Source of the DNA: Oculina patagonica
Lineage: Eukaryota
Reading direction: 5' to 3'
Length of the DNA stretch: 64,000 nucleotides
Assembly: GCF_052425735.1 (NCBI RefSeq)
Contig: NC_135760.1
Location: 19,158,001-19,222,000, forward strand
Made by a program: the position numbers and the translations under genes
Notes under the pieces: generated by a model
Database searches by the model: none
What the model was told of the DNA's origin: nothing
Seen by the model: the letters and a program-made list of their open reading frames with translations, nothing else
Part shown: positions 8,287-56,881 of the stretch, one piece after another
How positions within the stretch are numbered: position 1 is the stretch's first letter
How the letters are laid out: each line of letters begins with the position of its first letter

Positions 8287-11200
8287 GTAATGTACCCAAG
8301 CTGCTAAATCGGTTCTCTATCGAAGCCTGAAATTTGCAGACTGCAGACTAAAGAGTATTCCATTACCATTATTGAGAGCTACCGTAACTTGAACAGGCCA
8401 AGCGCAGTGCTATCAAGGCTAACCGGAACGCTATTTGGGCTAACCGGAGTGAAGGTCTGCAAGTGCTTCATCGGTCACAAATGTACATAGCAACGATATT
8501 ATTAAACAGTAAATAAATCTGAAGTTGCTTAGACCTTCGTGTCCCCCTTCGTACCCCCTCTACTAACTATGGTATACGTTTAGAGACGAAGGATCGATTG
8601 AGGAACAAAAGTAGGAGAGTCTGTGAGTTTGTAGAACTGAATGTCAAATCATTTTCTCTATAGCTTATGTTAAAGTATACTTACCATAAAAGGTAATATA
8701 CGAGACACAGCCAAGCATGGGGAATATCTGAGTATTCCCCTAATTTTTCAAAATTATATTTTATGTTCGCATAAAAATTTTAAACGCGTGCAAGAATAGT
8801 ACTTTATATTTACTTTATTTTATAGCATATTTACAGCTTTGGCTTTCTTACCCCAAGCAGTTAGCCTCCATTTGGCTCAAAAACATGAACGGAATTTGGT
8901 CTTTAGACATTTTCTGTTCAACGAAGCTAACAGTCAGTCCTTGAGTTTCGTTCTTGGAAAACTGTTGTACATATTTTTGCGACCGAAAGTTTTATTAATT
9001 TTGAGAGTTAACAAAATATTTGCTTATTGCCTTTCACAGGCTCTCAAGTTGAATTGTTTCTGGAGAAAGAACTGCAGCTGATAAACAAATACCGCTTGAT
9101 GCACGCTGCTGCTCCTCTCCAGCTCTCTCTCGACCTGACCAACAAGGCCGAGTTATGGGCCACGGAACTGGCCAATCAGGACAAAGAGAAAATTGACGTG
9201 AACTCTAAATATGGTCAGAACATTTTCTCGACCAAGGAAGCTAACGACGCTGTTACCAAAAGCGTGCAAACGTGGTACAATCAAATCAGATTTTACGATT
9301 TTCACAGCGCCAAAGGATCGCTCAAGTCATCTTATTTCACGCAGCTGGTGTGGGTGGGCTCCCAGTCAGTCGGGATAGGAAAGGCGCAGAGTGCAAGTGG
9401 GAAAACCTTCATTGTGGCTCTGTTTGATCCTCCTGGAAACAAGGGAAACTATCTGCATAACGTGTTGCCGGTTACAGGTAAGAAAAGCATGTTTGAGGTA
9501 TATTGACAAGGTAAAGTTTTTAAGATAACTGTCGAGGTTTGGTATGAAAAAGTGATGAAAAAACTCTTACAGTAATACGACTTGTAAAACCATCGTGGTC
9601 TTGAACCAAGTCCGTTATCATAGCTTTCCCAAATGGTTAGCGACAGGTCTCAATCCCTGACCAGAAAAAGTGAACTCAAGACTTTTTGGATTGTTAGAAG
9701 GCAGTCTTGATAAGCAGTCTTGGCTTACAAAGATTTCCGGGAGGCGTTTGTTACGCAAGCACGTAACAATATGTGTCAAATTGTAAGCTCAAAGACTCTT
9801 CTTTCGCAGATTTAGAGTTAATTGGGTAAACAAAATGGGAAGGGTATTGATGCAGACATCGATCCCTGGGTACTGTCTTCATAAGTGCATTCTTAGTTCG
9901 TAGACTTGTAAGACACTTTACCCTCTCTGTGATTTTCTTTCCGTCGTGGGTAACCTGCGGTGACTCCACTTCCATCACATCTTGATGAGGAGTAGTCATA
10001 ATGCAAGTTGCTTTAGCTTTTATGCTAAGGAGGAAAGTAAACTGAATTTTCACTAATTAGTTGGAAGCTGGTTGAAAGGGTTGGCAGCAATGCTTTGCCC
10101 GTACACCGACGTTCGATTGCTTGCCCATCATTAAAGGAGCAACAAGTTCTAGCCATCATATGCAAAAGAGCTCCTAAGTCAGCAAGCAAAGTGTCTGTTA
10201 AATAGACTGACAACTTGCCACAATCTTCGACTGGTAGTCCTTTAAAATTCGGCAGCTGAAAGAGAATTTTCCACAGTTCTGAAGAAAACATCATTTCTTA
10301 TTACACCAATTAATAATGCTTTATCTACAAATTGAGTCTACAGCTGTCAGTTAAGTTGTACGTTTCTGTTTCATAGCATAGTAAGAACAGATTGAAAAGG
10401 ACAATTCATAGAGGAATACTAAGCCTATTTCTTAAAAGTCTCCTAAACTACCGCTGCGTAGGAGACTAATGACTAATGACGTGCAACCTCGTAACCAGGG
10501 TCTTCGTGCGCAGTAAGGAACGAAACTCGATGTACGAGATTGTAATTAAAATGACGTGACAAGCGTATGTAAATATGCCTTTTCATGGACCAGTGCGTGT
10601 TCGTCACACACCTTTCATTAGTAATAGAATATTAAACAAGATTCTCGTGTTACGACCAGCAGGCCACTTTTTCTAGCTTTACTCATGAAGGTCATTTGTG
10701 CAGGACATGGAAAAACGGGCACTAAATCAATTGCCAAAGCTTTGCGGCACCTTGGGTTTACGGTATTTGACTGGGAAGAGCAGGCCTTTGACTTTCTGGA
10801 TCATTGGGTCGATGTTTTCCAAAATGGCACCAAGCCAGATGTGAAACGAGTTTACAAGAATGCTGATGCAGTCGTGGATTTCCCAGGAGCCTTTTTCTAC
10901 GAAGAAATACTGGAAGCTTTTCCTGACTGTAAAGTGCTTCTGAGCGAACGAGAGGAAGATTCGTGGATAAAAAGCCTTGTGCGTCAACTGGAAGCGATTT
11001 TTGCCGACCGATCCCAGATTCGATCCATGCTATCGCCAACAACGAGGAAAATGGATTATATTTTGGACTCCTACATTACTGCCACCATTGGCTCTTGTAA
11101 TACAAAGTCCACCTATGTTTTCAGAAAGCGATATCGTATCCACAACCACCGTGTTAAGTCGACTGTTCCCGCTGACAAGCTGTTGGTGTACAACGTAAAA

Positions 11201-14200
11201 CAAGGATGGAAGCCATTGTGTGATTTCTTGGGGTGCGAGGTCCCGACTGATCCCTTCCCACATGAGAACGTCAAAGCTGAAATTAGCAAGACGGCGTTGC
11301 TCATAAGCAGATGTGGCCGGCAGATAAAATGGGAAATGCTGAGAGGTCTTTTGGCAATCGGTTCAGTTCTTGTAATGATTGTAGCAACATTTCTGGCGAT
11401 CTGTTTGAATCAGTAAAATTGACCTCAAGGTAACTAACAACAATGACTTGTTTATTATGCTTTATTCATGATGTTTAGTTTGTTTATCCGATAAAGAAGT
11501 TGTGGCTCATTTAACTTTTTCGTGTATTGTCAGTTCATGAAAAGACTCTCTAAAAACTGGAAGCGTAAATTTAGCCTTAAAGTTCATCGTGTTCATTTTG
11601 TGTAATTGTCGTTAAATTTTAGATGGCTCTGATCCCCCTTCGAATAAGGTTTCTAAACTTTGCACAAATTTGATGTTCTATTAATCACAACAATAAAACC
11701 AGTGGTCATCGAGCTTTTTCTTGAGTGACAAGCACAAATTTGAAATTAAAATTGTGGGTATCTTAAACAGGTTATACTGTTGCTATGGTAAACTTAGGCT
11801 CGATTTCCGCCGTCTTCTCGGGGCTCATTGTCCCAAAAAAAGCGGCTGGGAATCGAGCCAATGGTAAACTGTTATGTCACAACAAAAATGACCACAACTT
11901 GTTCAGTGTGTTCACCAGTGATTGGGTATTTGTTTGACACCATTTTTGTGGCATTGGCTTGTAAAGAGTGGTGGCATTTTTCCATTAAAGTATTGGTGTC
12001 CGTCTACTAATTTTTAACTTCAAAACATTTAATCTTCAACAATCCTTTTTTAACAAATTTTATTAATCCTTTGAGAAAAACTATCTCCTCCCAAACACCC
12101 CCCACAATAACCAAAAAATTTACAAAACACCGCAATACATAATTTGGTGCACAGGTAATGAGCAGAGAGTTCTTATTTTCGGGGGACTTGTCAAAAAATC
12201 GCGAAATTAAAGACCTGCGGAAACGTATTTTTAACGTTACATAATAAGGTGAGGAGACTAATGGCGTGACATAGACCTGTATATAGATTTTGCTCAGCAA
12301 CGTTTTGGTAACGTTAAGTGTTTCGAGCAACCTTTTGTACGCAACCTACTGAGAACAAATGAGCCATCTGATGTATTAACAAACAAAATGAACTCAAAAT
12401 CTGCAGTTGTTTTGATTGCGCAGTAAGGAACGAACATGTGAACGAAGATTGATGACGTGACAGAAAGCTTGTGCAATAACACATACTGCAAATGTGCCTC
12501 AGTTTCATGGACCAGTGCGTGTCAGTCACTAGTAATAGAATATTAAACAAAATTCTCGAGTTACACGCGAAGCAGAAAATTACGGCCTTAAATTGGACAT
12601 CGCATCAGCGGAGCAGGCAATTCTTTTTAGCTTTACTCATGAAGGTCATTTGTGCAGGACGTGGAAAAACGGGTACTAAATCAATTGCCAAAGCCTTGCG
12701 GCACCTTGGGTTTACGGTATTGACTGGGAAGAGCAGAGCTTTGACTTTATGGATCACTGGGTCGATGTTTTCCAAAATGGCACCAAGCCAGATGTGAAAC
12801 GAGTTTACCAGAATGCTGATGAAGTCGTGGGTTTTCCTGGATACTTTTTCTACGAAGAAATACTGGAAGCTTTTCCTGACTGTAAAGTGATCCTGAGCGA
12901 ACGGGAGGAAGATTCGTGGGTAAAAAGTTTTGTGCGTCAACGGGAAGCGAGTTATGCCAACCGATCCAAGATTCAATCCCTTTTATCACCAACATTTAGA
13001 AAAATGGCGTACATTATGGATTCGAATTCCCACATTACTGCCATCAGTTGCTCTTTAAACCCCAAGTCCACCTATGTTTTTAGAAAGCTATTTCGCATCC
13101 ACAACCACCGTGTAAAGTCGATTGTTCCCGCTGATAAGCTGTTGGTGTACAACGTAAAACAAGGATGGAAGCCATTGTGTGATCTCTTGGGGTGCGAGGT
13201 CCCGACTGATCCCTTTCCACATGAGAACGTCAAAGCTGAAATTAGCAAGACGGCGTTTCTCGTAACCAGATGTGGCCGGCAGATAAAATGGGAAGTACAG
13301 AGAGGTCTTTTCGCAATCGGTTCAGTTCTTGTAATAATTGTAGCAATCTTTCTGGCGATCTGCTTATATCAGTAAAATTGACCTCAAGGTGACTAACAAC
13401 AATGACTTTTTTATATTTCTTTATTCATCATGTTTAGTTTGTTTTTGATCCGATAAAAGAGTTATACCGCATTACGAGGTCTCATTGTCAGTTCGTAAAG
13501 ACTCTCTAAAAACTGGAAGGGTAAATTTATCATTAAGCTTTATTCGTTTTCATTTTGTGTAATTGTTGTAAATATTTTAGATGGCTTTGATCCTCGAACA
13601 AGTATTTTAAACATAACAAACATTTGTATCGTACTATGCTAATCACAACTCGACAATAAAACTAGTGGTCATAGACCTTGTTCTTGAATGACAAACACAC
13701 TCACATTTTGAATCATTTTGGGGTGTCTTTGACAGGTTATACTGTTGCTATAGTAACCCGCCAAAGTGACCACAACTTGTTCAGTGTGTTCACCAATGAT
13801 TGGGTATTTGTTGGATACCATTTTTGGTATTAACTGTTAAAGAGTGGCAGCATTTATCCGTCAATGTATAACAGTTGGAAAATACTGGAAACCCTTACCA
13901 ACCACATCTAAATAGGAGGATTCAACATGGTGGATGGCCAAAATGAACCATTTGTTACGATACCTCCTCCGAAGACCTCAGAAAAGAAGATTCATGGGTA
14001 AAAAGATTTGGAATGAAAAGGGACGAAATTTGTGCAGGAGCCCAAAAAGAACTGAAAGCGGGAAGGCCCAAGCTTATTCTTTTATTCTGTTTAGCGCAAT
14101 CGAACAGAAATCAAGTTTAATTTAACAAGACATCGCTGCGTAGAACACAAGAGCAAAATACTTCCGAGCAGTTAGAATGGAACACTACAATGTATAAACG

Positions 14201-17200
14201 AAAGAGACTAATTATATATGATGGAATCTATTAGATTTCGTAGACAGAAATTTCTAATTCATATAATATAAAGGGACGCTGTGAGCAAGAGACCGCCGGT
14301 TTGACCTTTCTCGCAGCTCAAAAGCTTGCTCGCGCGTATCGCATGTCGTTTATCCGTGATATCACACTACAGTATAACGCAATATTTGTTGAGACAACAT
14401 AGGGACATCTACAAAAAATATAAAAATATAAAATAAAATATTACTGTTGTTCAATTGAGCAAATCTACGAAGAAAATGTATTATTTGCATCCTTGGTCTG
14501 TGAATTCATAACAACTGTACTTATTTGAATTCCACCAGATCCTCAGGCTATGCAATGCTACTTATACAATCACTAACAAGCTTCTTATGTTTCAAAAATG
14601 TAAGCTGCAGTTGGATAACAGTCTTTTTCACACACAAGGTGTCAGCTAAGGTGTCAGACCCCTTGTGAAACGCCATCGCTTTTGCATGCATCGCGTGCCA
14701 TTTTTCTTTAAGAGCTAACGTTTAACACTATGCTCCAGGAGGGGCAGGATGACATGCGCCACAACGAGAATCAAAAGGCCCTCAAGCTGCCTCGTGGCAC
14801 AATGTTGCCCGAGTGAAATTGGTGAAAGCGAACAGCTGTTTAAAGAAAATTTGAGACTTTTCACCCCAAATGCAATTTCCTCCTTGGACCTCCACTCAAC
14901 TAAAACTAAAATTTATTTGTCCCATTTGGTGGTACAGATCATAGTTAGGCGGCGAATTAACGATCTTATTTAATATTCCAGTTAGTTGAAAAAGCAATTA
15001 GTTTAGCGTTTTTATTTTTTAACCTTGATATAGTTTTAATGTTTTTATCTACTAGTTTTAATGTTTTATTTACACACGACCCCACAAGCTATGTAGCTTT
15101 TTTATCCCATCGTGTATAAATAAAGGTTTTTTTTTTTTGATTGATTGAAAAGAACAATCCGTGAACTGATCGGACTTAGGCTTAATTTACACGGGACCGG
15201 ACGGGAATCATTTAGATTGGAGTAGACAACTGCTCTTTCAAAGACCGGGAGCTCTGATGAAAACATTTGATCATATTAACACATGCATGTATAAGTTGCA
15301 CACTACAAGTATTAAATTTTTATATCGAGGAAATATAGTTCTTTGGCTAAATTCCAGAGGCAGTACCAGCTTCTTCGGTCATGAAGTTACATGCCTTGTG
15401 TAAATCATCATAACAGTAAAAGCGAGTCAAAACAATGCGAAAATATTCTACTTCGTTTTGTTGCAAATGCACAGCCATAAATGCAGATATTTACAATAGC
15501 AACTGGTGAAGAAATTAAAATAATTTTATTGGCAATCTGTGACCCAACAAACAGAGACCACACAAACAGAGAATGGCAAACTTGTGCTTTGACCGATGGT
15601 ACATACGGGGGTGGGTGGGGAGGGGGCGGGGGCGGGGGGTAATAATGTTGCCACTGACAATATGTACGCATTGTCATAACCTGCAATTAGGCGTTAGTTC
15701 TCGCGGCGGTGTAGTTTAGCATTGTCATGGATCAGTGCGTAAGTGTTCGTGACTAGCGCGTAACACGAGAATTAATAAAAACAACGACCGGTATAAACTT
15801 GACATCACACCATACATGCGAGTTTTGTGCCATATACTTTGATCATGAGGATCATTTGTGCAGGATTACAAAAAACGGGTACTAAATCAATCGCCAAAGC
15901 CTTGCGGCACCTTGGGTTTACGGTATTTGACTGGGAAGAGCAAATCTTTGACTTTGTGGATGACTGGGTCGATGTTTTCCAAAATGGTACTAGGCCAGAT
16001 GTGAAACGACTCTACCAAAATGCTGATGCAGCCGTGGATATGCCTGGGTGTTTTTTCTACGAGGAAATACTGGAGGCGTTTCCTGACTGTAAAGTCATTC
16101 TGAGCGAACGAGAGGAAGAATCGTGGATAAAAAGTTTTGTGAATCAACTAGAACTGGTGGATGCCGCTCGATCCAAGATTCGGTACATGCTATCGCCAAC
16201 GTCGAACAAAGTGAGGTATATCACGGACTCCTATTGGTACGCTGCTTTTGGCTCTTGTAACCCCAAGTCCACCTATGTTTTCAGAAAGCGATATCGTATC
16301 CACAACCACCGTGTAAAGTCGATTGTTCCCGCTGACAAGTTCTTGGTGTACAACGTAAAACAAGGATGGAAGCCATTGTGTGATTTCTTGGGGTGCGAGG
16401 TCCCGACTGTTGCCTTCCCACATGAAAATATCAATGCTGAAATTTCTTCGACGATCCTCATGACCAGATATGGCCGGCAAATAAAATGGGAAATGCAGAG
16501 AGGTGTTTTTGCAATCGGTTCAGTTCTGATAATAATTGTAGCAACATTTCTGGCCATCTATTTAAATCAGTGATATTTAGACTCGATTAGACTCGCATAG
16601 TGAATAACAACAATGACGTCTTCATTAAACTTTTGTTTATTCTTTTAGTTTGTTTTTCATCAAAAAAAGTTATACCGCATCAAGAGACCAAAGTCAACTT
16701 TTTCTACATTGCCAGTTCGTAAAAAAAAGGCTCTCTAAAACTTGCAGCGTAAATTTAATCATTAAGGCTTAAAATAGTTTTTTATTTAAATCTGGCCATA
16801 AGTGACCAAAAACTTCTTCAGTGTGTTCACCAATGATTGGGGCTCATTTCATACCATTATTGTAGCAATTACTAATAAAAGGTGTCCTAACACTGCTCCA
16901 TCAAAGTATAAGGGGGGGAGTTTGAAAATGAAAACATCCGCATGTTCTGAGAGAAATAGAGGGAATCTAGGCGAAGTTTTTCGTTTTGAAAAAATTGTTT
17001 TAGGATCACCGGCTGTTAACGAAAGTGTTTTAGGAAAATCGTCCGCCATTCCGGTTTGTTTGTCTGAGTCATGACGTCACTCGTGCGCTTCGCTATTCTT
17101 TGTATTCACATGACGTCATCAAAGTTCTTAAATCCAAAATCAAACGGTCCCTAAGGACCCTAAGCTGTATTAAATTTTTCATTGGCTATAAGACTTTCTA

Positions 17201-19796
17201 AATATATATTTTTTCAAAGGTTTTTCAGCTCGATAACATCCTTCGATAACATCTCGATAACATCCTAACATCCTTCCTTCAGGCCTTTTGAATTTCGGAG
17301 TTTTACACCACAAGATACATTCAATAATAGTTACAATAGCAATTAGTTAAGAAATTTAAATTATTCAATTGGCAAGCTGTGACACAAACAATGGATGGTA
17401 AGCCTGTGGTTTGACCGTTACGCACCAGGGGAGGGCTCATGCTACCGCTGACGTGATACGTACGTGTTGTCATGGATCAGTGCGTAGGTGTTCGTGACTA
17501 GCGAGTTATATACACATGAGAATAAACAAAACGACGTGAAACTTGAAATCAGAGCATAAAAGCAAGTCTTGAGACACATACTTTCAACATGAAGATCATT
17601 TGTGCAGGATATGCAAAAACTGGTACTAAATCTATCGCAAAAGCCTTGCGGTACCTTGGGTTTACGGTACTTGACTGGGAAGAGCAAATCTTTGACTTTG
17701 TAGATGACTGGGCCGACGTTTTCCAAAACGGCATCAAGCCAGATGTGAAGCGAATTTACCAGAATGCTGATGCAGTCGTGGATATGCCTGGAACCTTTTT
17801 CTACGAAGAAATAATGGAAGCGTTCCCTGACTGTAAAGTGCTTCTGAGTGAACGAGACGAAGATTCGTGGATAAAAAGTTTTGTTAATCAACTGGAATCG
17901 ATGTCTGCTGGACGAACCAAGATGTCGTATATGCTCTCGCCGACAGCGAGGAGAGTAAGATATGTCGTGGACTCGTATGGCAACGCTCTTTTTGGCTCGT
18001 GTAACCCCAAGTCGACCTATGTTCACAGAAAACGATATCGTATCCACAACCACCGTGTAAAGTCGATTGTTCCCGCTGACAAGCTGTTGGTGTACAACGT
18101 AAAACAAGGATGGAAGCCATTGTGTGATTTCTTAGGGTGCGAGGTCCCGACTGATCCCTTCCCACATGAAAATATCAAGGCTGAAATCACCGAGACACTT
18201 TCCAAGACTAGATATGGCCAGCAAATAAAATGGGAAATACATAGCGGTTTTTTTATAATCGGTTCAGTTCTTGTAATAATTGTAGCAATATTTCTGACCA
18301 TCTGTTTATTTAACTACAGTGATATTGACTCATGAGTAAATAACTGATAACAGTGATGTTTTTATAAAACTTTACTAATCATTTTTAGTTTGTTTTTAAT
18401 CCAATTAAGATGTTATAAGGAATTACGAGACCTAATTCAATTTTTTTTATATATAGCCTTATCGTAAAAAAAGACTTTCTGAAAACTTGAAGCGTAAATT
18501 TCATCATTAAGTTTAAATTTTTAATGTGTGTAAATTAATTCACGTTGCTACTCATTGCGTGCCAACAACGCAGGCAGCATCCGCCTTCATTTCGTACAGA
18601 ATTTACGAGTATGGTTCAGCAGAGATCACGTTTACGCACATATATTGGGTATACAAGCATAAAAACTAAAAATAATGCGTCCTTACTCAAATGAGATCTT
18701 AAATAAATTCGGTCACGAAATTGTAAAGAGTCAATTATCACACAACTCTTTAATCCAAATAAAGGAAACACAAATCTTTTAGAATACCTTTGTTGTTGAC
18801 GTGAGCAGAATGAAACACCAACGCAGTCATTTAACATGGCAGGTAGAGAGGGTCTCAATGGGGTGGGGGCTTTTACGGTTAACGGTTAAAATTTTGGCCT
18901 TTTTACGGCTAACGGTTAATTTATTTCCATTACGGTTAACAGAAGTTAAAAGTTAATTTTCATTGTTTTTAATAGTTAAAAATCAATTTCCATTATTGAA
19001 AAACGTATTTTAGGTCTTTGGACCATTTTTGGGACGATGAAGTAAACTAGTTTGGGTTATTTATAATCACTGACCGATTTTTACGGTTAACACATTTTAC
19101 GGCTAACGGTTAAAATTTTCCATTTTTTACGCCTAACGGCTAAATTTTTGGCCGTTTTACGGCTAACGGTTAACCCCATTGAGACCCTCGGTAGACAAAT
19201 TGAGCCATTTCGTAACTAGCCGGACGCCCACTCTTACAAGTGAATCTTATGCTCTCAAAAAAGGCGCGAAAACTTAAATCTTTTTAAATATTAAAATATT
19301 TGTGTGGCGACCCAAAAGGTTCTAAAGCGGGTTGTCCTAGACTCGTTTTCTCTGAAACCTTATGGTTTTGGACAGTTCGTTGATCGACGCCACAGCACAA
19401 GAAACCACATAGTAACAAAAATCAGAGTCGGATTATAATATTTGCCTATGGCATTGGGTTTTTTGACGCGACCACTTAACAAGTCGTCACGCCTCCCTCC
19501 CCCTTGCCCCTTGCCATCCTGCAGTTCTTCAAGTCACAGCGACATAAAATAAGCTGGCCACTACACAGCGACTTCACAGGAATCCCATGGTACACTGCTG
19601 TCTGTATCCACGGGAACTGTCCACGACACAGGTTCACTATTAGTATGCCCTCATTGCCAAAGGCTCTCTTAATTCTTATGCCATATCCTTAACATTAGTA
19701 TTCCTTATTCGGCCTAGCCATCAGTGCACAGTTTTCATTTCTGCCTTAAGTATCGAAATACTTAATGAAATGCTCAGTGACCTGGCCTTTGAATGG

Positions 19797-19827
<31 letters not shown>

Positions 19828-22800
19828 CAGACCTCACTGCTTTTGTTGTGTTAATCATGTTGTTTTGATGCAAACTAGTTTGCATTTACATAATAAAGGA
19901 GAGAGGTTTGTATCAATGCAAGGTCACCTCCAGCCTCACTACCATTCAAAGGCCAGGTCACTTGGCAGGCAACTGTAAAATGGACTATTGACACTTTCTT
20001 TCACTGCACACCGCTTTCGACAAGGCTGTGTACGATCTCTGTGACTTTCTCTTCTGGATCTTCTGGCTGTGGATTTCATGATGTTCGCGCGATTGCTTTC
20101 GGAGTACTCGCAAGCGTTCACCCAAGTTTTTGATTGGATGAAATAAGTCGGAAACTCTTCGAGTGCTTGAACGAAGATTGGAAAAACTTGCACTTGTTCC
20201 CCCGACTGACGGTCCATGTGCAAATTTTTTACTATGAAAAGGAAAAGTCAAAAACGTGTAATTATACCGTGGTTCTGTCTGCTTTGTGTTAAACCATATT
20301 CGTATTTTCGGTATTAGACTGGAATTATCTTGCAATGGAAGCTAATGCGGGGGGATATCATTAAAAAAGCTTCATGTCATTTGCGTTTGAAAAGATCCCC
20401 TGCATTAGCCTCCATTGCAAGCTAGTTCCAGTCTAATTAATTAGTATTATGCATGGACTGTTAATTAATAGTTTATTTTGTATTAATTTTTATTATAACT
20501 TACTAGAATCACCTGATGTTTTTACCGTGTATAAAGAATTGTTAAATAAAATAAATAAAATAAATAAACAAATAAATAAACTAGTTCCAGTTCAATACCG
20601 AGAATACGAATATGGTCTTTTATAACAACCCGAGAATGCGGCTTGTTTGTCTTGTAAATTCCTATTTGCCTTTTTTCATCTTTTTTTCTTTGACAATGTT
20701 ATTGTAATTGGTTGTACATGTCTATAAAGAGGAACAATAGCATAGAGCGAAAGTAAGTGTTCGTCACATAGGCAACATTCTAGCTGAAAAAGAATTTTGC
20801 GCAGAAAAAGAATACTATTACAGTAAAAATCCGAGCCAGAACAATAAAAAAGAACGGTAAAACATATTAAAGAAACGGAATTGAAAAATAAATTTAAGAC
20901 TTAGTTGACATGACTCTTTTGAAAAGCTTGTGTTTACAAATTACAGGTATACAGATCATGTATGCCTTGTAAATGCACGTAAACTCGGGGATACATTTTC
21001 ATGGATCATTGTGTTATCACACAAGCGAGTTAAACCAAATAAAAAAAAGACGAGTAATTTGACATCACATAAGGGGAGGAGACCATTTGTGTTGGATATG
21101 GAAAAACCGATAGTAAATCCATTGCTAAAGCTTTTCTTTACACTGGGTTTACGGTATTTGATTAAAAAGAAAAAAATGTCATTACAAGAAGCTTAAGAAT
21201 TATTTATTAACATGAATAGGAATGCAAATGTACAGTACACAAAATCCCTATTCATCAATCAGTGTGTTAGACGTGGCATGTTCTTAGGGAGGTACACCGA
21301 GCGAGTAGCTTGACCCGGCAGCAGTAAAGAAACGAACAGAGGTCAAAGACAGTTTTCAAGCTTTACTCATGAAGATCATTTGTGCAGGATATTCAAAAAC
21401 AGGCACTAAATCAATCGCCAAAGCCTTGCGGCACCTTGGGCTTACGGTATTTGACTGGGAAGAGCAGAGTTTTGACTTCCTAGATCACTGGGTCGATGTT
21501 TTCCAAAATGGAACCGTACCAGATGTCAAGCAAGTTTACCAGAATGCTGATGCAGCCGTGGATCTGCCTGGGTGCTTTTTCTACGAGGAAATACTGGAAG
21601 CTTTTCCTGACTGTAAAGTGATCCTGAGCGAGCGAGAAGAAGATTCATGGGTAAAAAGTTGGGCTCGTCAACTAGCATCTATATTAGCTACACGATCCGA
21701 GTATGTGGCCATGTTGTCGCCATCGTGGAGGAAAATGTGGTACGTTTATAATTCCTATGCTGAAGCCGCTCATGGCTCTAATAACCCCAAGTCCACATGT
21801 GTTTTTAGAAAGCGATACCGTATCCACAATCACCGTGTAAAGTCGATTGTTCCCGCTGACAAGCTGTTGGTGTACAACGTAAAACAAGGATGGAAGCCAT
21901 TGTGTGATTTCTTGGGGTGCGATGTCCCGACTGTTCCCTTCCCACATGAAAATATCAACGCTGAAATCACTGAGACACTTCCCATGACCAGATGGGGTCG
22001 GCAGGTGAATTGGGAAGTACAGAGAGGTTCTCTTGCCATCGGTTCAGTTCTTGTTGTAGCTGTAATAACTGGTCTGGCTATATATTTTAGTAAGTGACAT
22101 TCGGCTCAGAGTGAAAACAAAGACTTCTTGTATTATTCCTTAAAATATTAAAGATACTTGAGGGTCAGTGGTTTCTCCTTGATGGTTTCGATTCTAATTT
22201 GAGTTACGTCGCATTTAATTCTACAGCTCATTCAACAAAAATTGTCAGTTCAGCAACAACTCGGTTCAAACTTTACTTGTTAATTTCATTATCCCTTTTT
22301 TCAAAAATTAATGCATGTCATTCGATGTTTACTGCGTTTCCCTTAACGATTTCAAAAACCTTATTTATTCAATAATTCATGAATCCAGGGACTAATTAAA
22401 TCATGGACAATACAACACGTGTATGAGTTTCATATTGGCAAAATACCCCTTATTAGTATTTTTATACAATGAAAGGATACTAATAAGGCCAAGGACAAAC
22501 GCTTTTCTAACCTTATTGATAAATGTTACCAATACCGCCCAAAACTGAAAACCAGCCTGAACACTTTTTTAGGGTTAGAATTTTTAAAGCTATTTAATAT
22601 TTATTTTACCCATAGGCAAAGCGCATATTTAATCCTATTGTGCTGTCACTGTTTTTAAATTCTGTTTTTTTTAATCTGAATTTTGACTTGATAATGGAGC
22701 AGGTAGCGTAGAACATTCTTGGACTCTGATAGCTTTTGTAGATTTTAAGAACATTCTGGCCTTAATAAAAAACCTGTTACAAAAATCTTTTTCTCATTAC

Positions 22801-25800
22801 GGTGTCCATCTAGAATTAGATAAAAAAAACAGCAGTTTGGTTATGTTTACATATTTTAATTCGTAGATCGCGCGTATACACCCGCTAATTAAAGGGTGAA
22901 AGGTAAAGCCTGCTGTCGAGCCAAGTGGCTCATCAGGCCGGAGCTTATCCCGGTTTCTGTAGCATTAAGCGGCTCGGAGTATTTCTACTCCCCCCTGGAT
23001 GGGATGCTAGTCCATCGCAGGGTTACCCCTCAGCAGTAAATTTGCCGGTAACCCGTTATAAACTTGGGTGGAGAGAGGCACTATGAGAGTAAAGATTCTT
23101 GCATGCCCAAGAACACAATGCAGCGCCCTGGCCAGGGCTCAAACTGGGGCCGTTCGATCCGGAGTCCGGTGCACTAACCATAAGGCCACCGCGCCTCCCA
23201 CCAAACGTCAGCCCTCTAACGTCCTCAAGACCCAAGGAATTACATTAAGCATTCCAGAAAAAACACCTGGATACCTATAAAGTTCCAAAAGTAAGAACCC
23301 CTTCCCCTCTTCCGGCGGAAAGTAGCGACGTATCTAAACTATTGATAATTTTTTTTTGACAATTCCCGAATGTAGCGACCTTCTGAGTTTCAGAGAGCAA
23401 CTTCAAGCGTAATTTGACATGTTATGAGAAACAATGAGAATACAGATGCAACAAGCTGAAGTTTAACAATCAGTCAATCACAGTGGGTCTTTCCTTTTAG
23501 GACAAGGTCCGTGATTCGTGAGTGTGACATCCCCCCCCCCCCCTCTCCCAACCACCCTGAAAAAAGGTACTGTCATTACACTCATTAGACTCGCATAGAT
23601 TAAGGACTAGTTGTTCATTGAAATGTAAAATTCAATCGTTTTATGGCACATTGAGCCAATGTCAGTAGATATATTTGTTTAAGGTCCAATGAGTGACATT
23701 TCGAAAATATAACCGTCAGCCGTCAAATGCCGGCCCACAATTTAACCATCCATCGTCAAAAAGCAATGTTTTAAACTGTCAACCTTCAAAGGTACCTTTC
23801 CCCCATGGAGACCCTCCTATTCGCTCAATTATAGAAACTCTGGTGCGCTGACTAATTGGCAAATGGGAACCGATTGAAATGGAGGCAAAAATAATTAACA
23901 TTTATTGGACGAGGTCGAGCAAAGTATCGTGATTTGTCAGTAGCGAGCAGATCGATTATTTGTCAAAGCTGGCACTAACAAATAAAGATATTTTGGGACA
24001 GCTTACGTTGCTTGTGTGCAGTGTCGAGCAGTGAATATTCAAAGAACATGAATTAATATACAAAGTATGATAAAATTAATGATTAATTCGCCTTCAAGTT
24101 ATGAGATTGCTAGAGCTCCCTGACCTTACAATAAAGAAATATTAAGTTAAATTAGCCCTCGTATTATTTAATGCAATGTTATTCAAATTACAATCGAAAA
24201 ACATTGAGGAAAAAACCATCTACGCTCTAAGTGTCTTAGATATTTTAAGAATAAACAAAGACGTCTTTGTTTTAACTTTGAGTAGAGTGTCACTGATTAA
24301 AGCAGATAGCAAGAACAGTTATTACAATTATAACAAGAACTGAACCAATGGCAAAAGAACCTCTCTGCACTTCCCAATTCACCTGCCGACCCCATCTGGT
24401 CATGGGAAGCGTATCAGTGATTTCAGCGTTGATATTTTCATGTGGGAAGGGAACAGCCGGGACCTCGCACTCCAAGAAATCACACAATGGCTTCCATCCT
24501 TGTTTAACGCTGTACACCAAAAGCTTGTCAGCGGGAACATTTGACTTTACAAGTTGGTGGTTGATACGGTATCGCTTTCTGAAAACATAGGTGGACTTGG
24601 GGTTATGAGAGCCAAATTCGGCATCGACGTAGGCATTGTAAAGGTACCACATTTTCCTCCAAGTTGGCGACAACATGGCCACATACTCGGATCGTGTAGC
24701 CAAAATCGATGCCAGTTGACGGGCCCAACTTTTTACCCATGAATCTTCTTCTCGTTCGCTCAGAATCACTTTACAGTCAGGAAAAGCTTCCAGTATTTCC
24801 TCGTAGAAAAAGTTCCCAGGCATATCCACGACTGCGTCAGCATTCTGGTACATTCGTTCCACGTCTGGCCTTGTACCGTTTTGGAAAACATCGACCCAGT
24901 GATCTAAGAAATCAAAGCTCTGCTCTTCCCAGTCAAATACTGTATACCCAAGGTGCTGCAAGGCTTTGGTGATTGATTTAGTACCCGTTTTCCCAAGTCC
25001 TGCACAAATGACCTTCATGGTAAAGTTCAGCTATTAATGGTGGTTGTGCCTCTCTGCCGTAATGTCAACTTACATGTCGTTGTTTTTTTTTTCGTGCAAC
25101 TTGTCACGAACACGTCACTGATGCATGAAAAGACGCATTATTATTCATTGCAGCTACTATACTCTATTCTCATCGGATGAGAGCATTCCTGAGCTATTAA
25201 ATTCACGTTGACATCAAATTTTTATGTCATATCTACGGACAATAGGATTATACATGCAGAACTGATGTCATTTCTACAGATAACCTTGGAAGCTTTCTAC
25301 CTTGAAAAAAATATTGGAAAAATATTTATATTCCACGGTTTAATATTTGGTGCCTAACATCTTAAAAGTGGCACTTCGATTTCAATTTTTGGGATACCAA
25401 TCTTAGAAGATATATCAGTTTTCAAATGTTAGCTAATGTAAGAAAGGAATAATTTTCTACATTGGAATTTTATCTTTGCTGGTACTACACATTCACCTAG
25501 TGTATTTTGTGGCATTGGCTAGTCCTATCTATGTTTGCATATACGAAAAAAATCCTAATTACTTAGAGTATTAAGTCGAGTAATGTGGAGGGGGGGGGGG
25601 GGGGAGGGGCTCGTCAATGAAACATTGAATAAAGAGAGGGGCCACCTGCTCTTTTCAGGCCTGAGGAGGGGGTCCTGACGGACTGAATTTCTATCTTTCA
25701 TTATATTTTTCCCTACCCCCTCTACATAAATAATGACCGGTTCCTAATAGAGAACAGACTAGCATCGTGCGGAATCGTGCAAACGCCGCCTTTTTCTGCC

Positions 25801-50300: not shown

Positions 50301-50815
50301 TGGGTTAAAAAGGTGCCCCCTGCCAGAATTTCATACAGGCCTATAACTGAAATCGATCAGCTCATCGAATGCTATCACTGTACCAAATTTGGTGCTTCTT
50401 GATCAACTCATCAAATACTATCACTGTGCCAAATTTGGTGGTTGTTACTCAAAGGATGCAGTAAATTATGCTATAAAGCTTAAACGCCACCCACCCCTAC
50501 CCCCTGGGTCCAAAAAATGTCCCCCCTGACAGAATTGCGGATGGGCCTATATCTGAAATTGATCAGCTCATCGAATACTATCACTGTGCCAAATTTGGTG
50601 CTTTTTACTCAAAGGATGCAGTAAATTTTGCCATAAACCACCCACCCCCACCCCCTGGGTCCAAAAAATGTCCCCCCTGAAAGAATTGCGGATGGGCCTA
50701 TATCTGAAATTGATCAGCTCATCAAATACCATCACTGTGCCAAATTTGGTGCTTTTAACAAAAATCGCACAATTCACCCAAATTTATGCACCATATTGCC
50801 GCCTTTGCCGGACTA
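47308..50815. mobile_element. Academ-like non-autonomous DNA transposon with long TIRs built of ~160-bp tandem units
   Basis: TAGTCCGGCAA...TTGCCGGACTA termini with 3-bp TSD TAT; units start near 47350, 47510, 47671, 47831 and 47991, with inverted copies at ~50270-50770. Internal minus-strand remnant CCHEKTDTSLLLYA...VIRTMDSNI resembles the HEEADT..LLHA...VI.T.DTDV XPG/PIN-like motif. Confidence 0.75.
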
Positions 50816-53673: not shown

Positions 53674-53768
53674 CATTATATTGCGCCCGCGATCGTGGCC
53701 TTCAGTGAATAACCAACGACTGAAAACCAATCAGATTCGCGTTTATAAGTTACGCAATTTTCACTGCG

Positions 53769-53857
53769 TTTCAATCAGCATACAAGGAATTTCACTCAAC
53801 TGAAACAGCACTTCTTAGAGTACAAAATGACATCTTGTGTGCTCTTGATCAAAACAA
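53769..53857 (+). mobile_element. Non-LTR retrotransposon (L2/CR1-type) RT fragment
   Basis: [29 protein letters not shown]. Confidence 0.75.
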
Positions 53858-54455: not shown

Positions 54456-55322
54456 TCATTGATTAAAACAGATAGCAAGAACAGTTATTACAATTATTAC
54501 AAGAACTGAACCGATTGCAAAAACACCTCTCTGTACTTCCCGATTCACCTGCCGACCCCATCTGGTCATTGAAAGTGTCTTACTGATTTCACCTTTGATA
54601 TTTTCATGTGGGAAGAAAACAGTCGGCACATCACACTTCAAGAAATCACACAATGGCTCCCGGGGGGGGGGGGGGACTCGCATATGAAAGTGACGGGGAT
54701 GCTCGTCGTCTCGCTTAGGGGTGTAAATTTCGGACTTTTGGTCTCGCTTAGGGTGTTCCGGAAAAAAACGCCCAAAACGCCAATATTTTTAGCCATAATG
54801 GTCTCGTTTAGGGTTACACACGAAGAAATATACAAATATAAACTCCATTCTTAGTTTTTTTGTATCTTTTAGGGGTCAAGAAAGGCTTGAGCCACACCCA
54901 GATTGGTCTCTTTTAGGGGTTCTTTTCAAAATTTCCGACGAGCATCCCCGTCCGTTTCATATGGGAGTCCCCCCCCCCCGGGCAATGGCTTTCATCCTTG
55001 TTTGACGTTGTACACCAACAGCTTTTCAGCGGGAACAATCGACTTTACACGGTGGTTGTGGATACGATATCGCTTTCTGTGAACATATGTGGACTTGGGG
55101 CTACAAGAACCAAAGGCAGCGTCCCAATAGGAGCCCACGATATATTTCACTTTCTCCGCTGTCGGCGATAGCATCTCCACCTTGGATCCTGCAGCAGAGT
55201 CCGATTCTAGTTGATTCGCAAAACTTTTTACCCACGAATCTTCTTCCCGTTCGCTCAGGATCACTTTACAGTCAGGGAAAGCCTCCAGTATTTCTTCGAA
55301 GAAAAAAGTTCCAGGCAGATCC
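54456..55322 (-). pseudogene. Sulfotransferase-like copy 12, 5'-truncated and MITE-interrupted
   Basis: Homology starts at DLPG (55322); a MITE is inserted at 54659-54982 within GxKPLC. Confidence 0.85.
54659..54982. mobile_element. MITE with CCCG(G)n termini and 8-bp TSD
   Basis: CCCGGGG..GACTCGCATATGAAA...TTTCATATGGGAGTCCCC..CGGG flanked by CAATGGCT. Confidence 0.9.
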
Positions 55323-56152
55323 AGATCTGAAATTAAAGGCTCTTCTTTTTCAGCTTTAGAGCTAAGATAGCAAGGTGGTAGGGGTATATGCAGACGTCAT
55401 GTCTCCTGTTAGTGTAGTCAGAATATGCTGAAAGCCCCCCCCCCCCCCAGCCCCTTTAAAAGTAGGATTAAACATGGTGGAAGGTCTCCCAGAAGACCTC
55501 CGTGTGGAAGATTCGTGGATGAAACGTTTTGGAATGAAAGCTAGTACAGGAACGCAAAAAAATTAGAAGCGGAGAGGCCCAAGACTTTTTTTCTTCAAAA
55601 TCTGTCGTCTAACGCTGTGGTTCAGGACACACGCCAAACATTAACGAGAATCAAAAGACCTTAAAGGCCGCGTTAAATTTATGGCGGTCTGTATTAGTAT
55701 TCGTTACGTTATAAAAAGACAAATATTCGTTATACAAAGAAAAGTGTTTGTTATATAAAGGTCTTTATTAGTATTCGCTACCCATAGTTAGTTAGTAATT
55801 TTTATTAGTATCTTTTTTGTGTTTTGTTTACGTCAACAAGGGGTGTTTTACCAGTAAAATTCGCATGCACATAATTAACGAATTGTCCATGATTTCATCG
55901 GTGAGTTAATTCATGAATTATAAATAACCAAAGGTTTTTGAAGTCGTTCAGGAAACCAGTGAACATCGAATAACATGTATAAATTAAAAACGATGATACA
56001 ATTCGAAGAGATTCGTTTCTGGACTGACAATACCGCAGAAAAAATTGAATGAGCCCTAAAATATTAAATGCGATATAACTCAAATTAGAATCGAAAAAAT
56101 TGAGGAGTAAATCCATCGGATTAATAGCTTTGTTTTCACTTTTAGGCGAGTG

Positions 56153-56881
56153 TCATTGTTTAAAACAGATAGCCGCGACGATTATTACAATTATTACAAG
56201 AACTGAACCGATTGCTAAAACACCTCTCTGTACTTCCCAATTCACCTGCCGACCCCATCTGGTCATGGGAAGTGTCTTAGTGAGTTCAGCATTGATATTT
56301 TCATGTGGAAAGGGGACACTCGGGACATCGCATCCCAAGAAATCACACAATGGCTTCCACCCTTGTTTTACGTTGTACACCAACAGCTTGTCGGCTGGAA
56401 CAATCGACTTTACACGGTGGTTGTGGATACGATATCGCTTTCTGATAACGCATGTGGACTTGGGGTTATGGGAGCCATGGGCGGCATCAGTGAAGGAGTT
56501 ATAAACGAACATCAATTTCCTCCATGTTGGCGATAACATAGCCACATACTCGGATCGTGTAGCCAATAACGATTTCGCTTGACGAGTCCTACTTTTTAAC
56601 CACGAATCTTCCTCTCGTTCGCTCAGAATCACTTTACAGTCAGGAAAAGCTTCCAGTATTTCCTCGTAGAAAAAATACCCAGGCAGATCTACGGCTGCAT
56701 CAGCATTCTGGTAAACTCGTTTCACATCTGGTTTGGTGCCATTTTGGAAAACATCGACCCAGTGATCTAGAAAGTCATAGATCTGCTCTTCCCAGTCAAA
56801 TACCGTAAACCCAAGTTGCCGCAAGGCTTTGGCGATTGATTTAGTACCCGTTTTACCATATCCTGCACAAATGATCTTCAT
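56153..56881 (-). CDS. Sulfotransfer_4-like protein (copy 13)
   Basis: Intact 242-aa paralog. Confidence 0.85.
   Translation of the reverse strand: MKIICAGYGKTGTKSIAKALRQLGFTVFDWEEQIYDFLDHWVDVFQNGTKPDVKRVYQNADAAVDLPGYFFYEEILEAFPDCKVILSEREEDSWLKSRTRQAKSLLATRSEYVAMLSPTWRKLMFVYNSFTDAAHGSHNPKSTCVIRKRYRIHNHRVKSIVPADKLLVYNVKQGWKPLCDFLGCDVPSVPFPHENINAELTKTLPMTRWGRQVNWEVQRGVLAIGSVLVIIVIIVAAICFKQ

What the first reader, a model, noticed from the sequence alone, without database searches (positions are those of the whole stretch)
10685..56881. Birth-and-death array of 13 intronless, tail-anchored Sulfotransfer_4-like genes
Seen: 9 intact ~242-aa copies, 3 disrupted copies and 1 remnant in 46 kb, all single-exon with a C-terminal hydrophobic anchor. 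Known: the VIxAGxx[KR]TGTxS...GWxPLCxFL family (Pfam Sulfotransfer_4) is best known from fungi and bacteria and differs from animal cytosolic SULTs and from N-anchored type II Golgi sulfotransferases. Inference: a lineage-expanded, possibly horizontally acquired, membrane-tethered small-molecule or lipid sulfation system (detoxification, chemical defence or symbiosis). Substrates are unknown.
Basis: partly seen in the sequence, partly recalled or inferred. Interest (0 to 1): 0.8.

Follow-up and report, generated by a model that had tools for sequence, protein, structure and literature searches.

The report
Coral array of membrane-anchored sulfotransferase genes
A stony coral chromosome carries 13 side-by-side copies (9 intact) of a small single-exon gene for a sulfate-adding enzyme with a membrane anchor at its tail end; the enzyme family is known and looks old in animals rather than recently borrowed from microbes, but this anchored form has never been studied.

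Summary
Window 10685-56881 (Oculina patagonica) holds 13 PF17784 (Sulfotransfer_4) loci: 9 intact single-ORF genes of 240-248 aa, 3 broken copies and one 31-codon stub. The array is bounded by unrelated genes.

All intact copies keep the PAPS-binding loop (GxxKTGTKS), the Arg89/Ser97 pair and the Asp that aligns with the catalytic Asp of the schistosome enzymes. The AlphaFold model (pLDDT 97) best matches Cpz8, SgdX2 and the schistosome sulfotransferases. Each copy ends in its only hydrophobic segment, 0-7 residues before the stop, which is a tail-anchor layout. Each 5'-complete copy also keeps a conserved upstream promoter block.

Paralogs are old (dS 0.3-0.5), under purifying selection (dN/dS about 0.37), and vary most at residues 96-135, which contain positions aligned to schistosome drug-contact residues.

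PF17784 is the 'S. mansoni-type' family, and schistosomes have a multi-copy locus too. Tail-anchored relatives occur in Nematostella, other corals and, in large numbers and with introns, in tunicates. Animal sequences form one clade apart from the bacterial, fungal and algal ones (100/100). Recent horizontal acquisition is not supported.

Best reading: cytosol-facing, ER-anchored, PAPS-dependent small-molecule or lipid sulfotransferases. Substrates are unknown.

The parts
10685..11416 (+). c1, intact 243-aa PF17784 gene with C-terminal anchor
12639..13375 (+). c2, copy with a single 1-bp deletion in a TTT run near 12720; rest of the ORF and all motifs are intact (young pseudogene or sequencing slip)
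15845..16573 (+). c3, intact 242-aa gene
17589..18335 (+). c4, intact 248-aa gene (longest luminal tail, NYSDIDS)
21080..21177 (+). c5, 5' stub: about 31 codons with a stop, keeps its upstream motif
21369..22097 (+). c6, intact 242-aa gene (modelled copy)
24290..25018 (-). c7, intact 242-aa gene; first copy of the minus-strand block, convergent with c6
31629..32351 (-). c8, intact 240-aa gene
34473..35201 (-). c9, intact 242-aa gene (ATG at 35201)
44733..45457 (-). c10, pseudogene: start codon is GTG, internal stop, frame shift near codon 140
46365..47093 (-). c11, intact 242-aa gene
54459..55324 (-). c12, pseudogene: first ~63 codons missing, internal stop, 321-bp MITE inserted at 54662-54982
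56153..56881 (-). c13, intact 242-aa gene
10583..10607 (+). upstream conserved block of c1 (13-mer plus GTGTTCGTCAC)
12505..12517 (+). upstream 13-mer of c2
15725..15753 (+). upstream conserved block of c3
17470..17498 (+). upstream conserved block of c4
20999..21011 (+). upstream 13-mer of stub c5
21252..21264 (+). upstream 13-mer of c6
25103..25128 (-). upstream conserved block of c7
32441..32466 (-). upstream conserved block of c8
35299..35324 (-). upstream conserved block of c9
45550..45575 (-). upstream conserved block of c10
47156..47181 (-). upstream conserved block of c11
57007..57019 (-). upstream 13-mer of c13

Best explanation
The locus is an old tandem family, evolving by birth and death, of single-exon genes. 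Each gene has its own compact promoter and encodes a PF17784 ('S. mansoni-type') PAPS-dependent sulfotransferase with a C-terminal tail anchor.

**Proposed mechanism**
- The protein has no signal peptide and is made in the cytosol.
- Its single, very hydrophobic C-terminal helix is inserted after translation, most likely into the ER membrane. This is inferred from the high hydrophobicity and the short, nearly uncharged tail.
- The catalytic domain therefore faces the cytosol, where PAPS is made.
- PAPS would be held by the loop G7-x-x-K10-T-G-T-K-S15 (5'-phosphosulfate) and by R89/S97 (3'-phosphate).
- Asp65 would act as the base that deprotonates an acceptor hydroxyl, as Asp91 does in the schistosome enzyme.
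- The acceptor pocket is partly built by helices at residues ~96-135. This is the part that differs most among paralogs, so the nine intact genes probably sulfate different small, probably lipophilic or membrane-associated, acceptors.

**Shown:** sequence family, fold, motif conservation, C-terminal hydrophobic segment, selection pattern, promoter block, phylogeny.

**Inferred:** PAPS use, the role of Asp65, ER targeting, cytosolic orientation, substrate class and substrate diversification.
For: - **Family:** Pfam PF17784 at 190-194 bits, full profile length.
- **Solved relatives by sequence:** Cpz8 (9kf1, E 4e-25), SgdX2 (E 1e-21) and schistosome SULTs (E 1e-15 to 5e-19).
- **Fold:** AF2 model with pLDDT 97.4 and pTM 0.90. 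Foldseek best hits are Cpz8 with PAP (TM 0.87 by target), SgdX2 and the schistosome SULTs. Heparan 3-OST, TPST and NDST follow only at E about 1e-2.
- **Catalytic Asp:** SmSULT D91 / ShSULT D100 (PMC7167500) aligns to D65. D65 is invariant in the 9 copies and present in 66 of 75 family members.
- **Cofactor residues in the family alignment:** K10 (57 K plus 18 R of 75), G12 and T13, R89 (73/75), S97 (73/75).
- **Tail:** the only hydrophobic segment, KD19 2.4-3.3, ending 0-7 aa before the stop; N-terminal KD is 0.41 or less. The model shows helix 208-241.
- **Selection:** median dN/dS is 0.37, falling to 0.05-0.1 in the motifs. dN peaks at codons 96-135, with dN/dS up to 0.85. ShSULT drug-contact residues I158 and S166 align to positions 116 and 124 in that block; position 124 reads D/R/R/W/W/E/N/R/M across the paralogs.
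- **Promoter block:** 12 hits against 0.17 expected, all 80-140 bp upstream of a copy and on its strand. It is also conserved in another coral.
- **Known chemistry of relatives:** Cpz8 sulfates phenolic small molecules (PMC11677658). SmSULT sulfates a hydroxymethyl group of oxamniquine.
- **Membrane precedent:** the fungal PF17784 proteins LdrG and LdrH sit on ER and lipid droplets (preprint 10.1101/2022.11.24.517872).
Against: - No biochemical, localisation or expression data exist for any tail-anchored member.
- No transcript was found, so expression and the single-exon mRNA structure are inferred.
- dN/dS never exceeds 1, so the variable block may reflect relaxed constraint rather than adaptive diversification.
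- The fungal members that bind membranes do so through amphipathic helices and act in lipid-droplet biogenesis, and no catalysis has been shown for them.
- The ER assignment, as opposed to mitochondrial outer membrane, peroxisome or lipid droplet, rests only on general rules for tail-anchored proteins.
Confidence: 0.62

Rival explanations
1. Recent horizontal acquisition. The genes entered the coral lineage from a bacterium or fungus, which would explain why they lack introns, and then expanded.
For: The coral and Nematostella genes are single-exon. By sequence, the closest solved structures are bacterial: Cpz8 at E 4e-25 against 1e-15 to 5e-19 for the schistosome enzymes. Bacteria hold thousands of PF17784 genes (PMC13449962), some with a C-terminal hydrophobic tail. 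Among animals, names were found only for anthozoans, tunicates, flatworms and a rotifer, so the distribution looks patchy.
Against: The careful ML tree separates all labelled animal sequences except the rotifer from the bacterial, fungal and algal ones at 100/100. Cnidarian labels fall on one side of a branch (83/90), and two divergent Nematostella paralogs lie inside that group. The family is present in both complex corals (Acropora, Montipora) and robust corals (Oculina). The Clavelina homolog has 3 introns and SmSULT-OR has 1. GC and GC3 match the neighbouring genes. The best bacterial identity is only about 34%.
Confidence: 0.08
2. Non-catalytic membrane or lipid-droplet proteins. The fold is kept as a scaffold that regulates lipid droplets or ER membranes, as reported for fungal LdrG and LdrH, and no sulfation takes place.
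For: Two fungal PF17784 proteins localise to ER and lipid droplets, and their loss changes droplet number and size; no enzymology was reported. The natural function of SmSULT-OR is unknown.
Against: Every residue expected for PAPS binding and catalysis is invariant across nine paralogs separated by dS 0.3-0.5, and dN/dS is 0.05-0.1 in those motifs. A scaffold role would not require the P-loop Lys, the Arg/Ser pair and the catalytic Asp all at once. Three solved relatives are active sulfotransferases.
Confidence: 0.08
3. The same enzymes, but aimed at a different membrane or serving housekeeping sulfation of one endogenous substrate. On this reading the many copies provide dosage or expression diversity rather than substrate diversity. 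The target could be the mitochondrial outer membrane, peroxisomes or lipid droplets, and the substrate could be, for example, a sterol.
For: dN/dS stays below 1 in the variable block. Tail sequences differ among copies, for example NYSDIDS in c4 against NQ or KQ in others, which could change targeting. The promoter block differs between sub-lineages. In Acropora, PF00685 paralogs in tandem arrays differ in expression (PMC12314368).
Against: Amino-acid change is concentrated in the block that aligns with drug-contact residues of the schistosome enzymes, not spread evenly. Paralog lineages have been kept across coral species, which argues against plain redundancy.
Confidence: 0.2

Closest known systems
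Schistosoma sulfotransferases SmSULT-OR / ShSULT / SjSULT (PDB 4MUA, 5TIV, 5TIZ); the founding members of PF17784 / IPR040632
   Same: Same Pfam family and fold. The catalytic Asp and the PAPS-binding residues align. Both are animal genes, and both lie in a multi-copy locus of paralogs (PMC7405262).
   Different: The schistosome enzymes are soluble, with no C-terminal hydrophobic segment in the crystallised chains. Sequence identity in the Foldseek alignments is only about 21-26%. The schistosome gene has two exons whereas the coral genes have one. The schistosome locus has 7 genes, against 13 loci here.
Cpz8 (Streptomyces, caprazamycin pathway; PDB 9KF1/9KF2) and SgdX2 (sungeidine pathway; PDB 8Y9P)
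   Same: These are the best sequence and structure matches (E 4e-25; TM 0.84-0.87 by target). Both are PAPS-type small-molecule O-sulfotransferases, and Cpz8 accepts phenolics such as 4-methylumbelliferone (PMC11677658).
   Different: They are bacterial, soluble and encoded in biosynthetic gene clusters, with about 30% identity to the coral proteins. In the tree, the labelled bacterial sequences fall on the far side of a 100/100 split from the coral proteins.
Aspergillus oryzae LdrG / LdrH (PF17784 proteins on ER and lipid droplets)
   Same: Same Pfam family, and they associate with membranes on the cytosolic side.
   Different: Binding is through amphipathic helices rather than a terminal transmembrane helix. 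The reported role is in lipid-droplet biogenesis, and no sulfation has been shown.
Animal cytosolic SULTs (PF00685), including the tandem expansion in Acropora tenuis
   Same: Same broad P-loop sulfotransferase superfamily and PAPS logic. A tandem expansion in a coral has been discussed as detoxification capacity (PMC12314368).
   Different: No PF00685 match at E 0.01 or better. Cytosolic SULTs use a catalytic His according to textbook knowledge, whereas this family uses Asp. They are soluble.
Golgi type II sulfotransferases (heparan 3-OST, NDST, TPST)
   Same: Membrane-bound sulfotransferases. They share a remote fold similarity (TM 0.38-0.46, E about 1e-2).
   Different: Opposite topology. 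Those enzymes have an N-terminal signal anchor and a lumenal catalytic domain that depends on PAPS import. Here the N-terminus starts directly with the first beta strand and the P-loop, and the only hydrophobic segment is at the C-terminus.

Membership tests
PF17784 Sulfotransfer_4 / IPR040632 S. mansoni-type sulfotransferase | Profile HMM match above the curated cut-off over the whole domain | tested here: met
   190-194 bits against a cut-off of 22.8; profile positions 1-214 of 215
PF17784 Sulfotransfer_4 / IPR040632 S. mansoni-type sulfotransferase | Fold of the solved members | tested here: met
   AF2 pLDDT 97.4. Foldseek: Cpz8 E 8e-15 (TM 0.87 by target), SgdX2 4e-14, schistosome SULTs about 1e-12
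PF17784 Sulfotransfer_4 / IPR040632 S. mansoni-type sulfotransferase | 5'-phosphosulfate-binding loop and 3'-phosphate-binding Arg/Ser | tested here: met
   GxxKTGTKS at residues 7-15, plus R89 and S97, are invariant in the 9 copies. R89 and S97 are each 73/75 in the family alignment. The roles are assigned from general sulfotransferase knowledge.
PF17784 Sulfotransfer_4 / IPR040632 S. mansoni-type sulfotransferase | Catalytic Asp (SmSULT D91 / ShSULT D100) | tested here: met
   Aligns to D65 in the VD[LMF]P motif; invariant in the 9 copies and 66/75 in the family
PF17784 Sulfotransfer_4 / IPR040632 S. mansoni-type sulfotransferase | PAPS-dependent sulfotransfer activity | not testable with these tools
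   Needs recombinant protein
Tail-anchored membrane proteins | Single transmembrane segment at the extreme C-terminus | tested here: met
   KD19 of 2.4-3.3 at residues ~220-241, with 0-7 residues after it; modelled as helix 208-241
Tail-anchored membrane proteins | No signal peptide and no other hydrophobic segment | tested here: met
   Best KD19 elsewhere is 0.82 or less; N-terminal KD19 is 0.41 or less. Hydropathy only; no dedicated predictor was available.
Tail-anchored membrane proteins | Post-translational insertion (GET/TRC40 or a related pathway) with a cytosolic N-terminal domain | not testable with these tools
   Needs localisation and protease-protection experiments
Cytosolic SULT (PF00685) | PF00685 profile match | tested here: not met
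   Only PF17784 was reported at E 0.01 or better
Golgi type II sulfotransferases | N-terminal signal anchor with a lumenal catalytic domain | tested here: not met
   No N-terminal hydrophobic segment; fold similarity is only remote
Birth-and-death multigene family | Intact genes and pseudogenes together in one array | tested here: met
   9 intact, 3 broken, 1 stub. The same mix is seen in another coral's array.
Birth-and-death multigene family | Paralogs group across species rather than within a species (no strong concerted evolution) | tested here: inconclusive
   Window copies interleave with copies from other coral assemblies, but support is mostly 80-91 SH-aLRT and the species behind those assemblies are not named. 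dS of 0.29-0.54 between paralogs argues against homogenisation, but dS is locally low at codons 11-35 and 151-200.
Recently horizontally transferred gene | Nested within a donor clade and absent from related animal lineages | tested here: not met
   100/100 split between the animal clade and the microbial group. Present in Nematostella, Acropora, Montipora and tunicates.
Recently horizontally transferred gene | Base composition unlike the host | tested here: not met
   CDS GC is 0.43-0.455 and GC3 is 0.44-0.48. The flanking RNase_T ORF has 0.447 and 0.452.

The most novel reading that the evidence does not exclude
Tail-anchored PF17784 enzymes may form an unrecognised third topological class of animal sulfotransferases: ER-anchored and cytosol-facing, distinct from both the soluble SULTs and the lumenal Golgi enzymes. 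This class is shared by anthozoans and tunicates and has radiated into large tandem families in both. These two sessile marine lineages are known, from my own knowledge and not tested here, for sulfated sterols, alkyl sulfates and other sulfated natural products. On this reading the arrays would be the missing biosynthetic or defensive sulfation toolkit for lipophilic metabolites. The restricted animal distribution would reflect either repeated loss or an ancient transfer between marine lineages.
Probability: 0.3. Interest if true: 0.65.

Novelty: new variant of a known kind. Interest (0 to 1): 0.42.

Why it matters
All characterised members of this enzyme family are soluble: the schistosome drug activators and two Streptomyces pathway enzymes. 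The natural role of the animal members is unknown. This locus shows that most of the family's near relatives carry a C-terminal membrane anchor, 69 of the 102 full-length representatives among the 150 best matches. It also shows that corals and tunicates maintain large, old, selectively constrained arrays of such genes.

If the anchored enzymes sulfate lipophilic metabolites at the cytosolic face of the ER, that would add a new compartment and topology to animal sulfation. It would also give candidate genes for the sulfated lipids and sterols of marine invertebrates, and might point to the natural substrates of the schistosome enzymes.

For coral genomics specifically, this is one more example of tandem expansion in a small-molecule-metabolism family, with a clear promoter module that could be used to study its regulation.

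Tried and rejected
- **Transcript evidence.** An exact-protein look-up of c13 found nothing on record. The short contigs encoding a 70%-identical homolog turned out to be a holobiont metagenome scaffold and an unannotated sequencing-run (Logan) contig with the same layout, not evident mRNAs. Expression and UTR structure therefore stay untested.
- **Structure mapping.** Model coordinates are not exposed to scripts. I could not measure how far the variable residues lie from the active site and used the ShSULT alignment instead.
- **Bacterial genome scan.** The scan with the family alignment failed because no stretch was conserved enough. The single-protein scan with P0224 only recovered its close Desulfobacterium-type relatives.
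- **NCBIfam.** No model matches.
- **Intergenic ORFs.** Pfam scans of ten intergenic ORFs gave nothing relevant.
- **Literature.**
  - No paper in the library treats tail-anchored sulfotransferases.
  - None links Ciona SAAF to a sulfotransferase.
  - The Acropora sulfotransferase expansion paper concerns PF00685, not this family.
- **Positive selection.** No sliding window reached dN/dS above 1. Site models (codeml, HyPhy) were not available.
- **Placing the schistosome proteins in the tree.** Their sequences could not be obtained as protein ids, so they were left out.
- **Rows left out of the trees.**
  - Fragments and hits on short contigs were omitted.
  - The fused Acropora model P0002 was omitted.
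  - Three long proteins were cut to the domain.
Full report
**1. The observation**

The window has no N and a GC content near 0.40 throughout. Names attached to identical or near-identical proteins place it on a 29.98-Mb contig of the stony coral Oculina patagonica.

tblastn with one copy finds 13 loci between 10685 and 56881 and none outside. Nine are intact ORFs of 240-248 aa: c1, c3, c4, c6, c7, c8, c9, c11 and c13. They are 69-86% identical in pairs.

The other four are damaged:
- c2 differs from an intact gene by a single 1-bp deletion in a TTT run after about codon 27. It is either a very young pseudogene or a sequencing slip.
- c10 has GTG in place of the start codon, an internal stop and a frame shift.
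- c12 has lost its first ~63 codons, has a stop, and carries a 321-bp MITE with 44-bp terminal inverted repeats.
- c5 is a 31-codon 5' stub that still has its upstream motif.

Copies c1-c6 lie on the plus strand and c7-c13 on the minus strand, so the two blocks converge between 22.1 and 24.3 kb. The array is bounded by a CAP-domain ORF (9027-9506) and an RNase_T exonuclease ORF (58657-59466).

**2. What the genes encode**

Each tested copy matches Pfam PF17784 (Sulfotransfer_4) at 190-194 bits over the whole profile and matches no other sulfotransferase family.

The closest solved structures by sequence are:
- the Streptomyces enzyme Cpz8 (E 4e-25);
- SgdX2 (E 1e-21);
- the Schistosoma japonicum, S. 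haematobium and S. mansoni sulfotransferases (E 5e-19 to 3e-15).

An AlphaFold model built on a 75-sequence alignment is very confident (pLDDT 97.4, pTM 0.90). Its best structural matches are the same proteins: Cpz8 with PAP bound has TM 0.87 normalised by target. Heparan sulfate 3-O-sulfotransferases, TPST and NDST follow only at E about 1e-2.

The catalytic base of the schistosome enzymes is Asp91 (SmSULT) or Asp100 (ShSULT) (PMC7167500). I fixed the numbering offset with the Y54F and S166T mutant chains. With that offset the catalytic Asp aligns with Asp65 of the coral protein, in the motif VD[LMF]P.

Asp65, the loop G7-x-x-K10-T-G-T-K-S15, R89 and S97 are invariant in all nine intact copies, and are conserved in 66 to 75 of 75 family members. 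The roles of the loop (5'-phosphosulfate) and of the Arg/Ser pair eight residues apart (3'-phosphate) are assigned from general knowledge of PAPS-dependent sulfotransferases. They were not tested here.

**3. The tail**

The only hydrophobic stretch in each protein is at residues ~220-241. Its Kyte-Doolittle mean over 19 residues is 2.4-3.3, and 0-7 residues follow it. Nowhere else does the value exceed 0.82, and the N-terminus runs straight into the first beta strand and the P-loop. The model shows one long helix from 208 to 241.

This is the layout of a tail-anchored protein: made in the cytosol, inserted after translation, with the catalytic domain left on the cytosolic side. The high hydrophobicity and the short, nearly uncharged tail suggest the ER as the destination. 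That is an inference from general rules and was not tested.

The orientation is the opposite of the Golgi type II sulfotransferases. It would give the enzyme direct access to cytosolic PAPS.

**4. Gene anatomy and regulation**

Homology between copies ends 8-125 bp upstream of the ATG (265 bp in one pair) and 0-370 bp downstream of the stop.

Within that short upstream stretch lies a conserved module:
- TCATGNATCAGTG;
- a few bases later, GTGTTCGTGAC;
- an AATAAAAAC box about 65-70 bp before the ATG;
- AACTTGACATCAC.

The 13-mer, allowing one mismatch, occurs 12 times in the window against 0.17 expected by chance. Every occurrence is 80-140 bp upstream of a copy and on that copy's strand; only the 5'-truncated c12 lacks it. 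The module is also present at the same spacing upstream of two of five copies in another coral's array. Synonymous sites have diverged by 0.3-0.5, so this conservation points to function.

I read the module as a compact promoter with a TATA-like box and a short 5'UTR, which would make the genes truly single-exon. No transcript data could be obtained. The factor that binds the block is unknown. The block contains an RCGTG core in most copies, but I draw no conclusion from that.

**5. Evolution of the array**

- Pairwise dS is 0.29-0.54 and dN is 0.08-0.20. The median dN/dS is 0.37.
- The motifs are under strong constraint (dN/dS 0.05-0.1).
- Amino-acid change is concentrated at codons 96-135 (dN up to 0.48, dN/dS up to 0.85) and in the anchor, where hydrophobic residues substitute for one another.
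- Two oxamniquine-contact residues of ShSULT, I158 and S166, align to positions 116 and 124 of the coral protein, inside the variable block. Position 124 reads D, R, R, W, W, E, N, R, M across the nine copies.

This pattern fits diversification of the acceptor pocket. No window exceeds dN/dS of 1, so positive selection is not shown.

In a tree with copies from other coral assemblies, the window copies do not form a species-specific cluster. They interleave with copies from other assemblies, for example c9 with P0007, c6 and c13 with P0005 and P0008, and c3 and c4 with P0039 and P0046 (support mostly 80-91). Another coral contig shows the same kind of array, again with intact and broken members.

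Together with the pseudogenes, the stub, the MITE and a young LTR element between c7 and c8, this supports birth-and-death evolution. The locally low dS at codons 11-35 and 151-200 is not explained. It could reflect short conversion tracts.

**6. Where the family occurs, and the transfer hypothesis**

An exhaustive search found 8,688 representative clusters (50% identity) at E 1e-3 or better. Among the 102 full-length representatives in the best 150, 69 end in a comparable hydrophobic tail.

Named relatives include:
- Acropora, Montipora and Oculina loci on two other chromosomes;
- two divergent Nematostella paralogs;
- many paralogs in the tunicates Clavelina, Styela, Ciona and Phallusia;
- a bdelloid rotifer;
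- a basidiomycete yeast;
- a brown alga;
- Desulfobacterium-type bacteria.

A careful maximum-likelihood tree of 94 sequences separates the bacterial, fungal, algal and rotifer group from all other animal sequences at 100/100. Cnidarian labels fall on one side of a branch (83/90), and so do tunicate labels (71/70).

Gene structures differ between lineages:
- The Nematostella gene is single-exon and sits inside an intron of a JmjC gene.
- The Clavelina gene has four exons.
- SmSULT-OR has two exons and lies in a locus with six paralogs (PMC7405262).

GC and GC3 of the coral copies match the neighbouring genes. InterPro names the family 'Sulfotransferase, S. mansonii-type' (PMC11625862).

The family was therefore already present, with its tail, before the hexacoral radiation. 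It is shared with chordates and is not a recent microbial import into corals. An ancient transfer, or repeated loss from an ancestral animal gene, cannot be told apart with the labelled sequences available.

**7. Function**

The characterised relatives all sulfate hydroxyl groups of small molecules:
- SmSULT sulfates the hydroxymethyl group of oxamniquine.
- Cpz8 sulfates phenolic compounds (PMC11677658).
- SgdX2 is titled an 'activating' sulfotransferase of a secondary-metabolite pathway.

Two fungal members sit on ER and lipid-droplet membranes.

I therefore favour PAPS-dependent O-sulfation of small, probably lipophilic acceptors at the cytosolic face of the ER, with the paralogs differing in acceptor preference. 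Which role applies cannot be decided from sequence. The candidates are detoxification, biosynthesis of sulfated lipids or sterols, and sulfate used as a leaving group. The natural substrate of even the schistosome enzyme is still unknown.

**8. Verdict**

The horizontal-transfer idea and the 'fungal and bacterial' framing are not supported.

This is a new, membrane-anchored variant of a known enzyme family, arranged in a way that already has an animal precedent. Interest is moderate. The anchored class is widespread and uncharacterised, and the array offers clear experiments. Nothing here contradicts current understanding.

Noticed in passing
window 26880-31477: LTR retroelement between c7 and c8. 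Its two 860-bp LTRs are 99.9% identical (26880-27739 and 30618-31477). They flank a gag/zinc-knuckle ORF (28064-29323) and a 293-aa ORF with no family match. No pol was seen, so it is a recent insertion of a non-autonomous or truncated element.
   Followed up: partly
window 54662-54982: 321-bp MITE-like insertion with 44-bp terminal inverted repeats (93% identical), bordered by G and C runs, inside pseudogene c12.
   Followed up: partly
window 40907-42319 (+): 470-aa ORF very rich in Pro and Gln with a Cys-rich C-terminal end, in the most GC-rich part of the window (0.49). It has no Pfam match and sits in the 9.5-kb gap between c9 and c10. It could be a low-complexity secreted or matrix protein, or a chance ORF.
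   Followed up: no
window 47313-48340 and 50253-50801: Satellite-like repeats with a period of about 160 bp. A second block in inverted orientation lies about 2 kb away, between c11 and c12.
   Followed up: no
window 10685-10790 and equivalents in all copies (codons 11-35 and 151-200): Synonymous divergence is 3-5 times lower (0.09-0.27) than in codons 26-50 and 86-135 (0.5-1.4). The first 100 nt are about 93% identical among four copies. Short gene-conversion tracts or constraint at the nucleotide level could explain this; it is unresolved.
   Followed up: partly
L002 10001-10735 (Nematostella vectensis): The single-exon Nematostella homolog lies on the same strand inside an intron of a JmjC/RIOX1-like gene. 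It is a nested gene, not part of an array.
   Followed up: no
L003 10001-11483 (Clavelina lepadiformis) and the hits: Tunicates carry dozens of PF17784 paralogs on many chromosomes, with introns near codons 86, 134 and 172 in the one examined. This is a second large animal radiation of the same subfamily. Some tunicate paralogs replace the hydrophobic tail with a Trp-rich C-terminus.
   Followed up: partly
window 1140-1664: Minisatellite encoding GLVKR-type repeats on one strand (weak GLTT-repeat match), outside the array.
   Followed up: no
P0002 (Acropora digitifera, 420 aa) and P0121 (403 aa): Database gene models that fuse a PF17784 domain to another domain (PF23187, or a trypsin-like C-terminal end). 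They may be annotation merges of neighbouring genes rather than real fusions.
   Followed up: no
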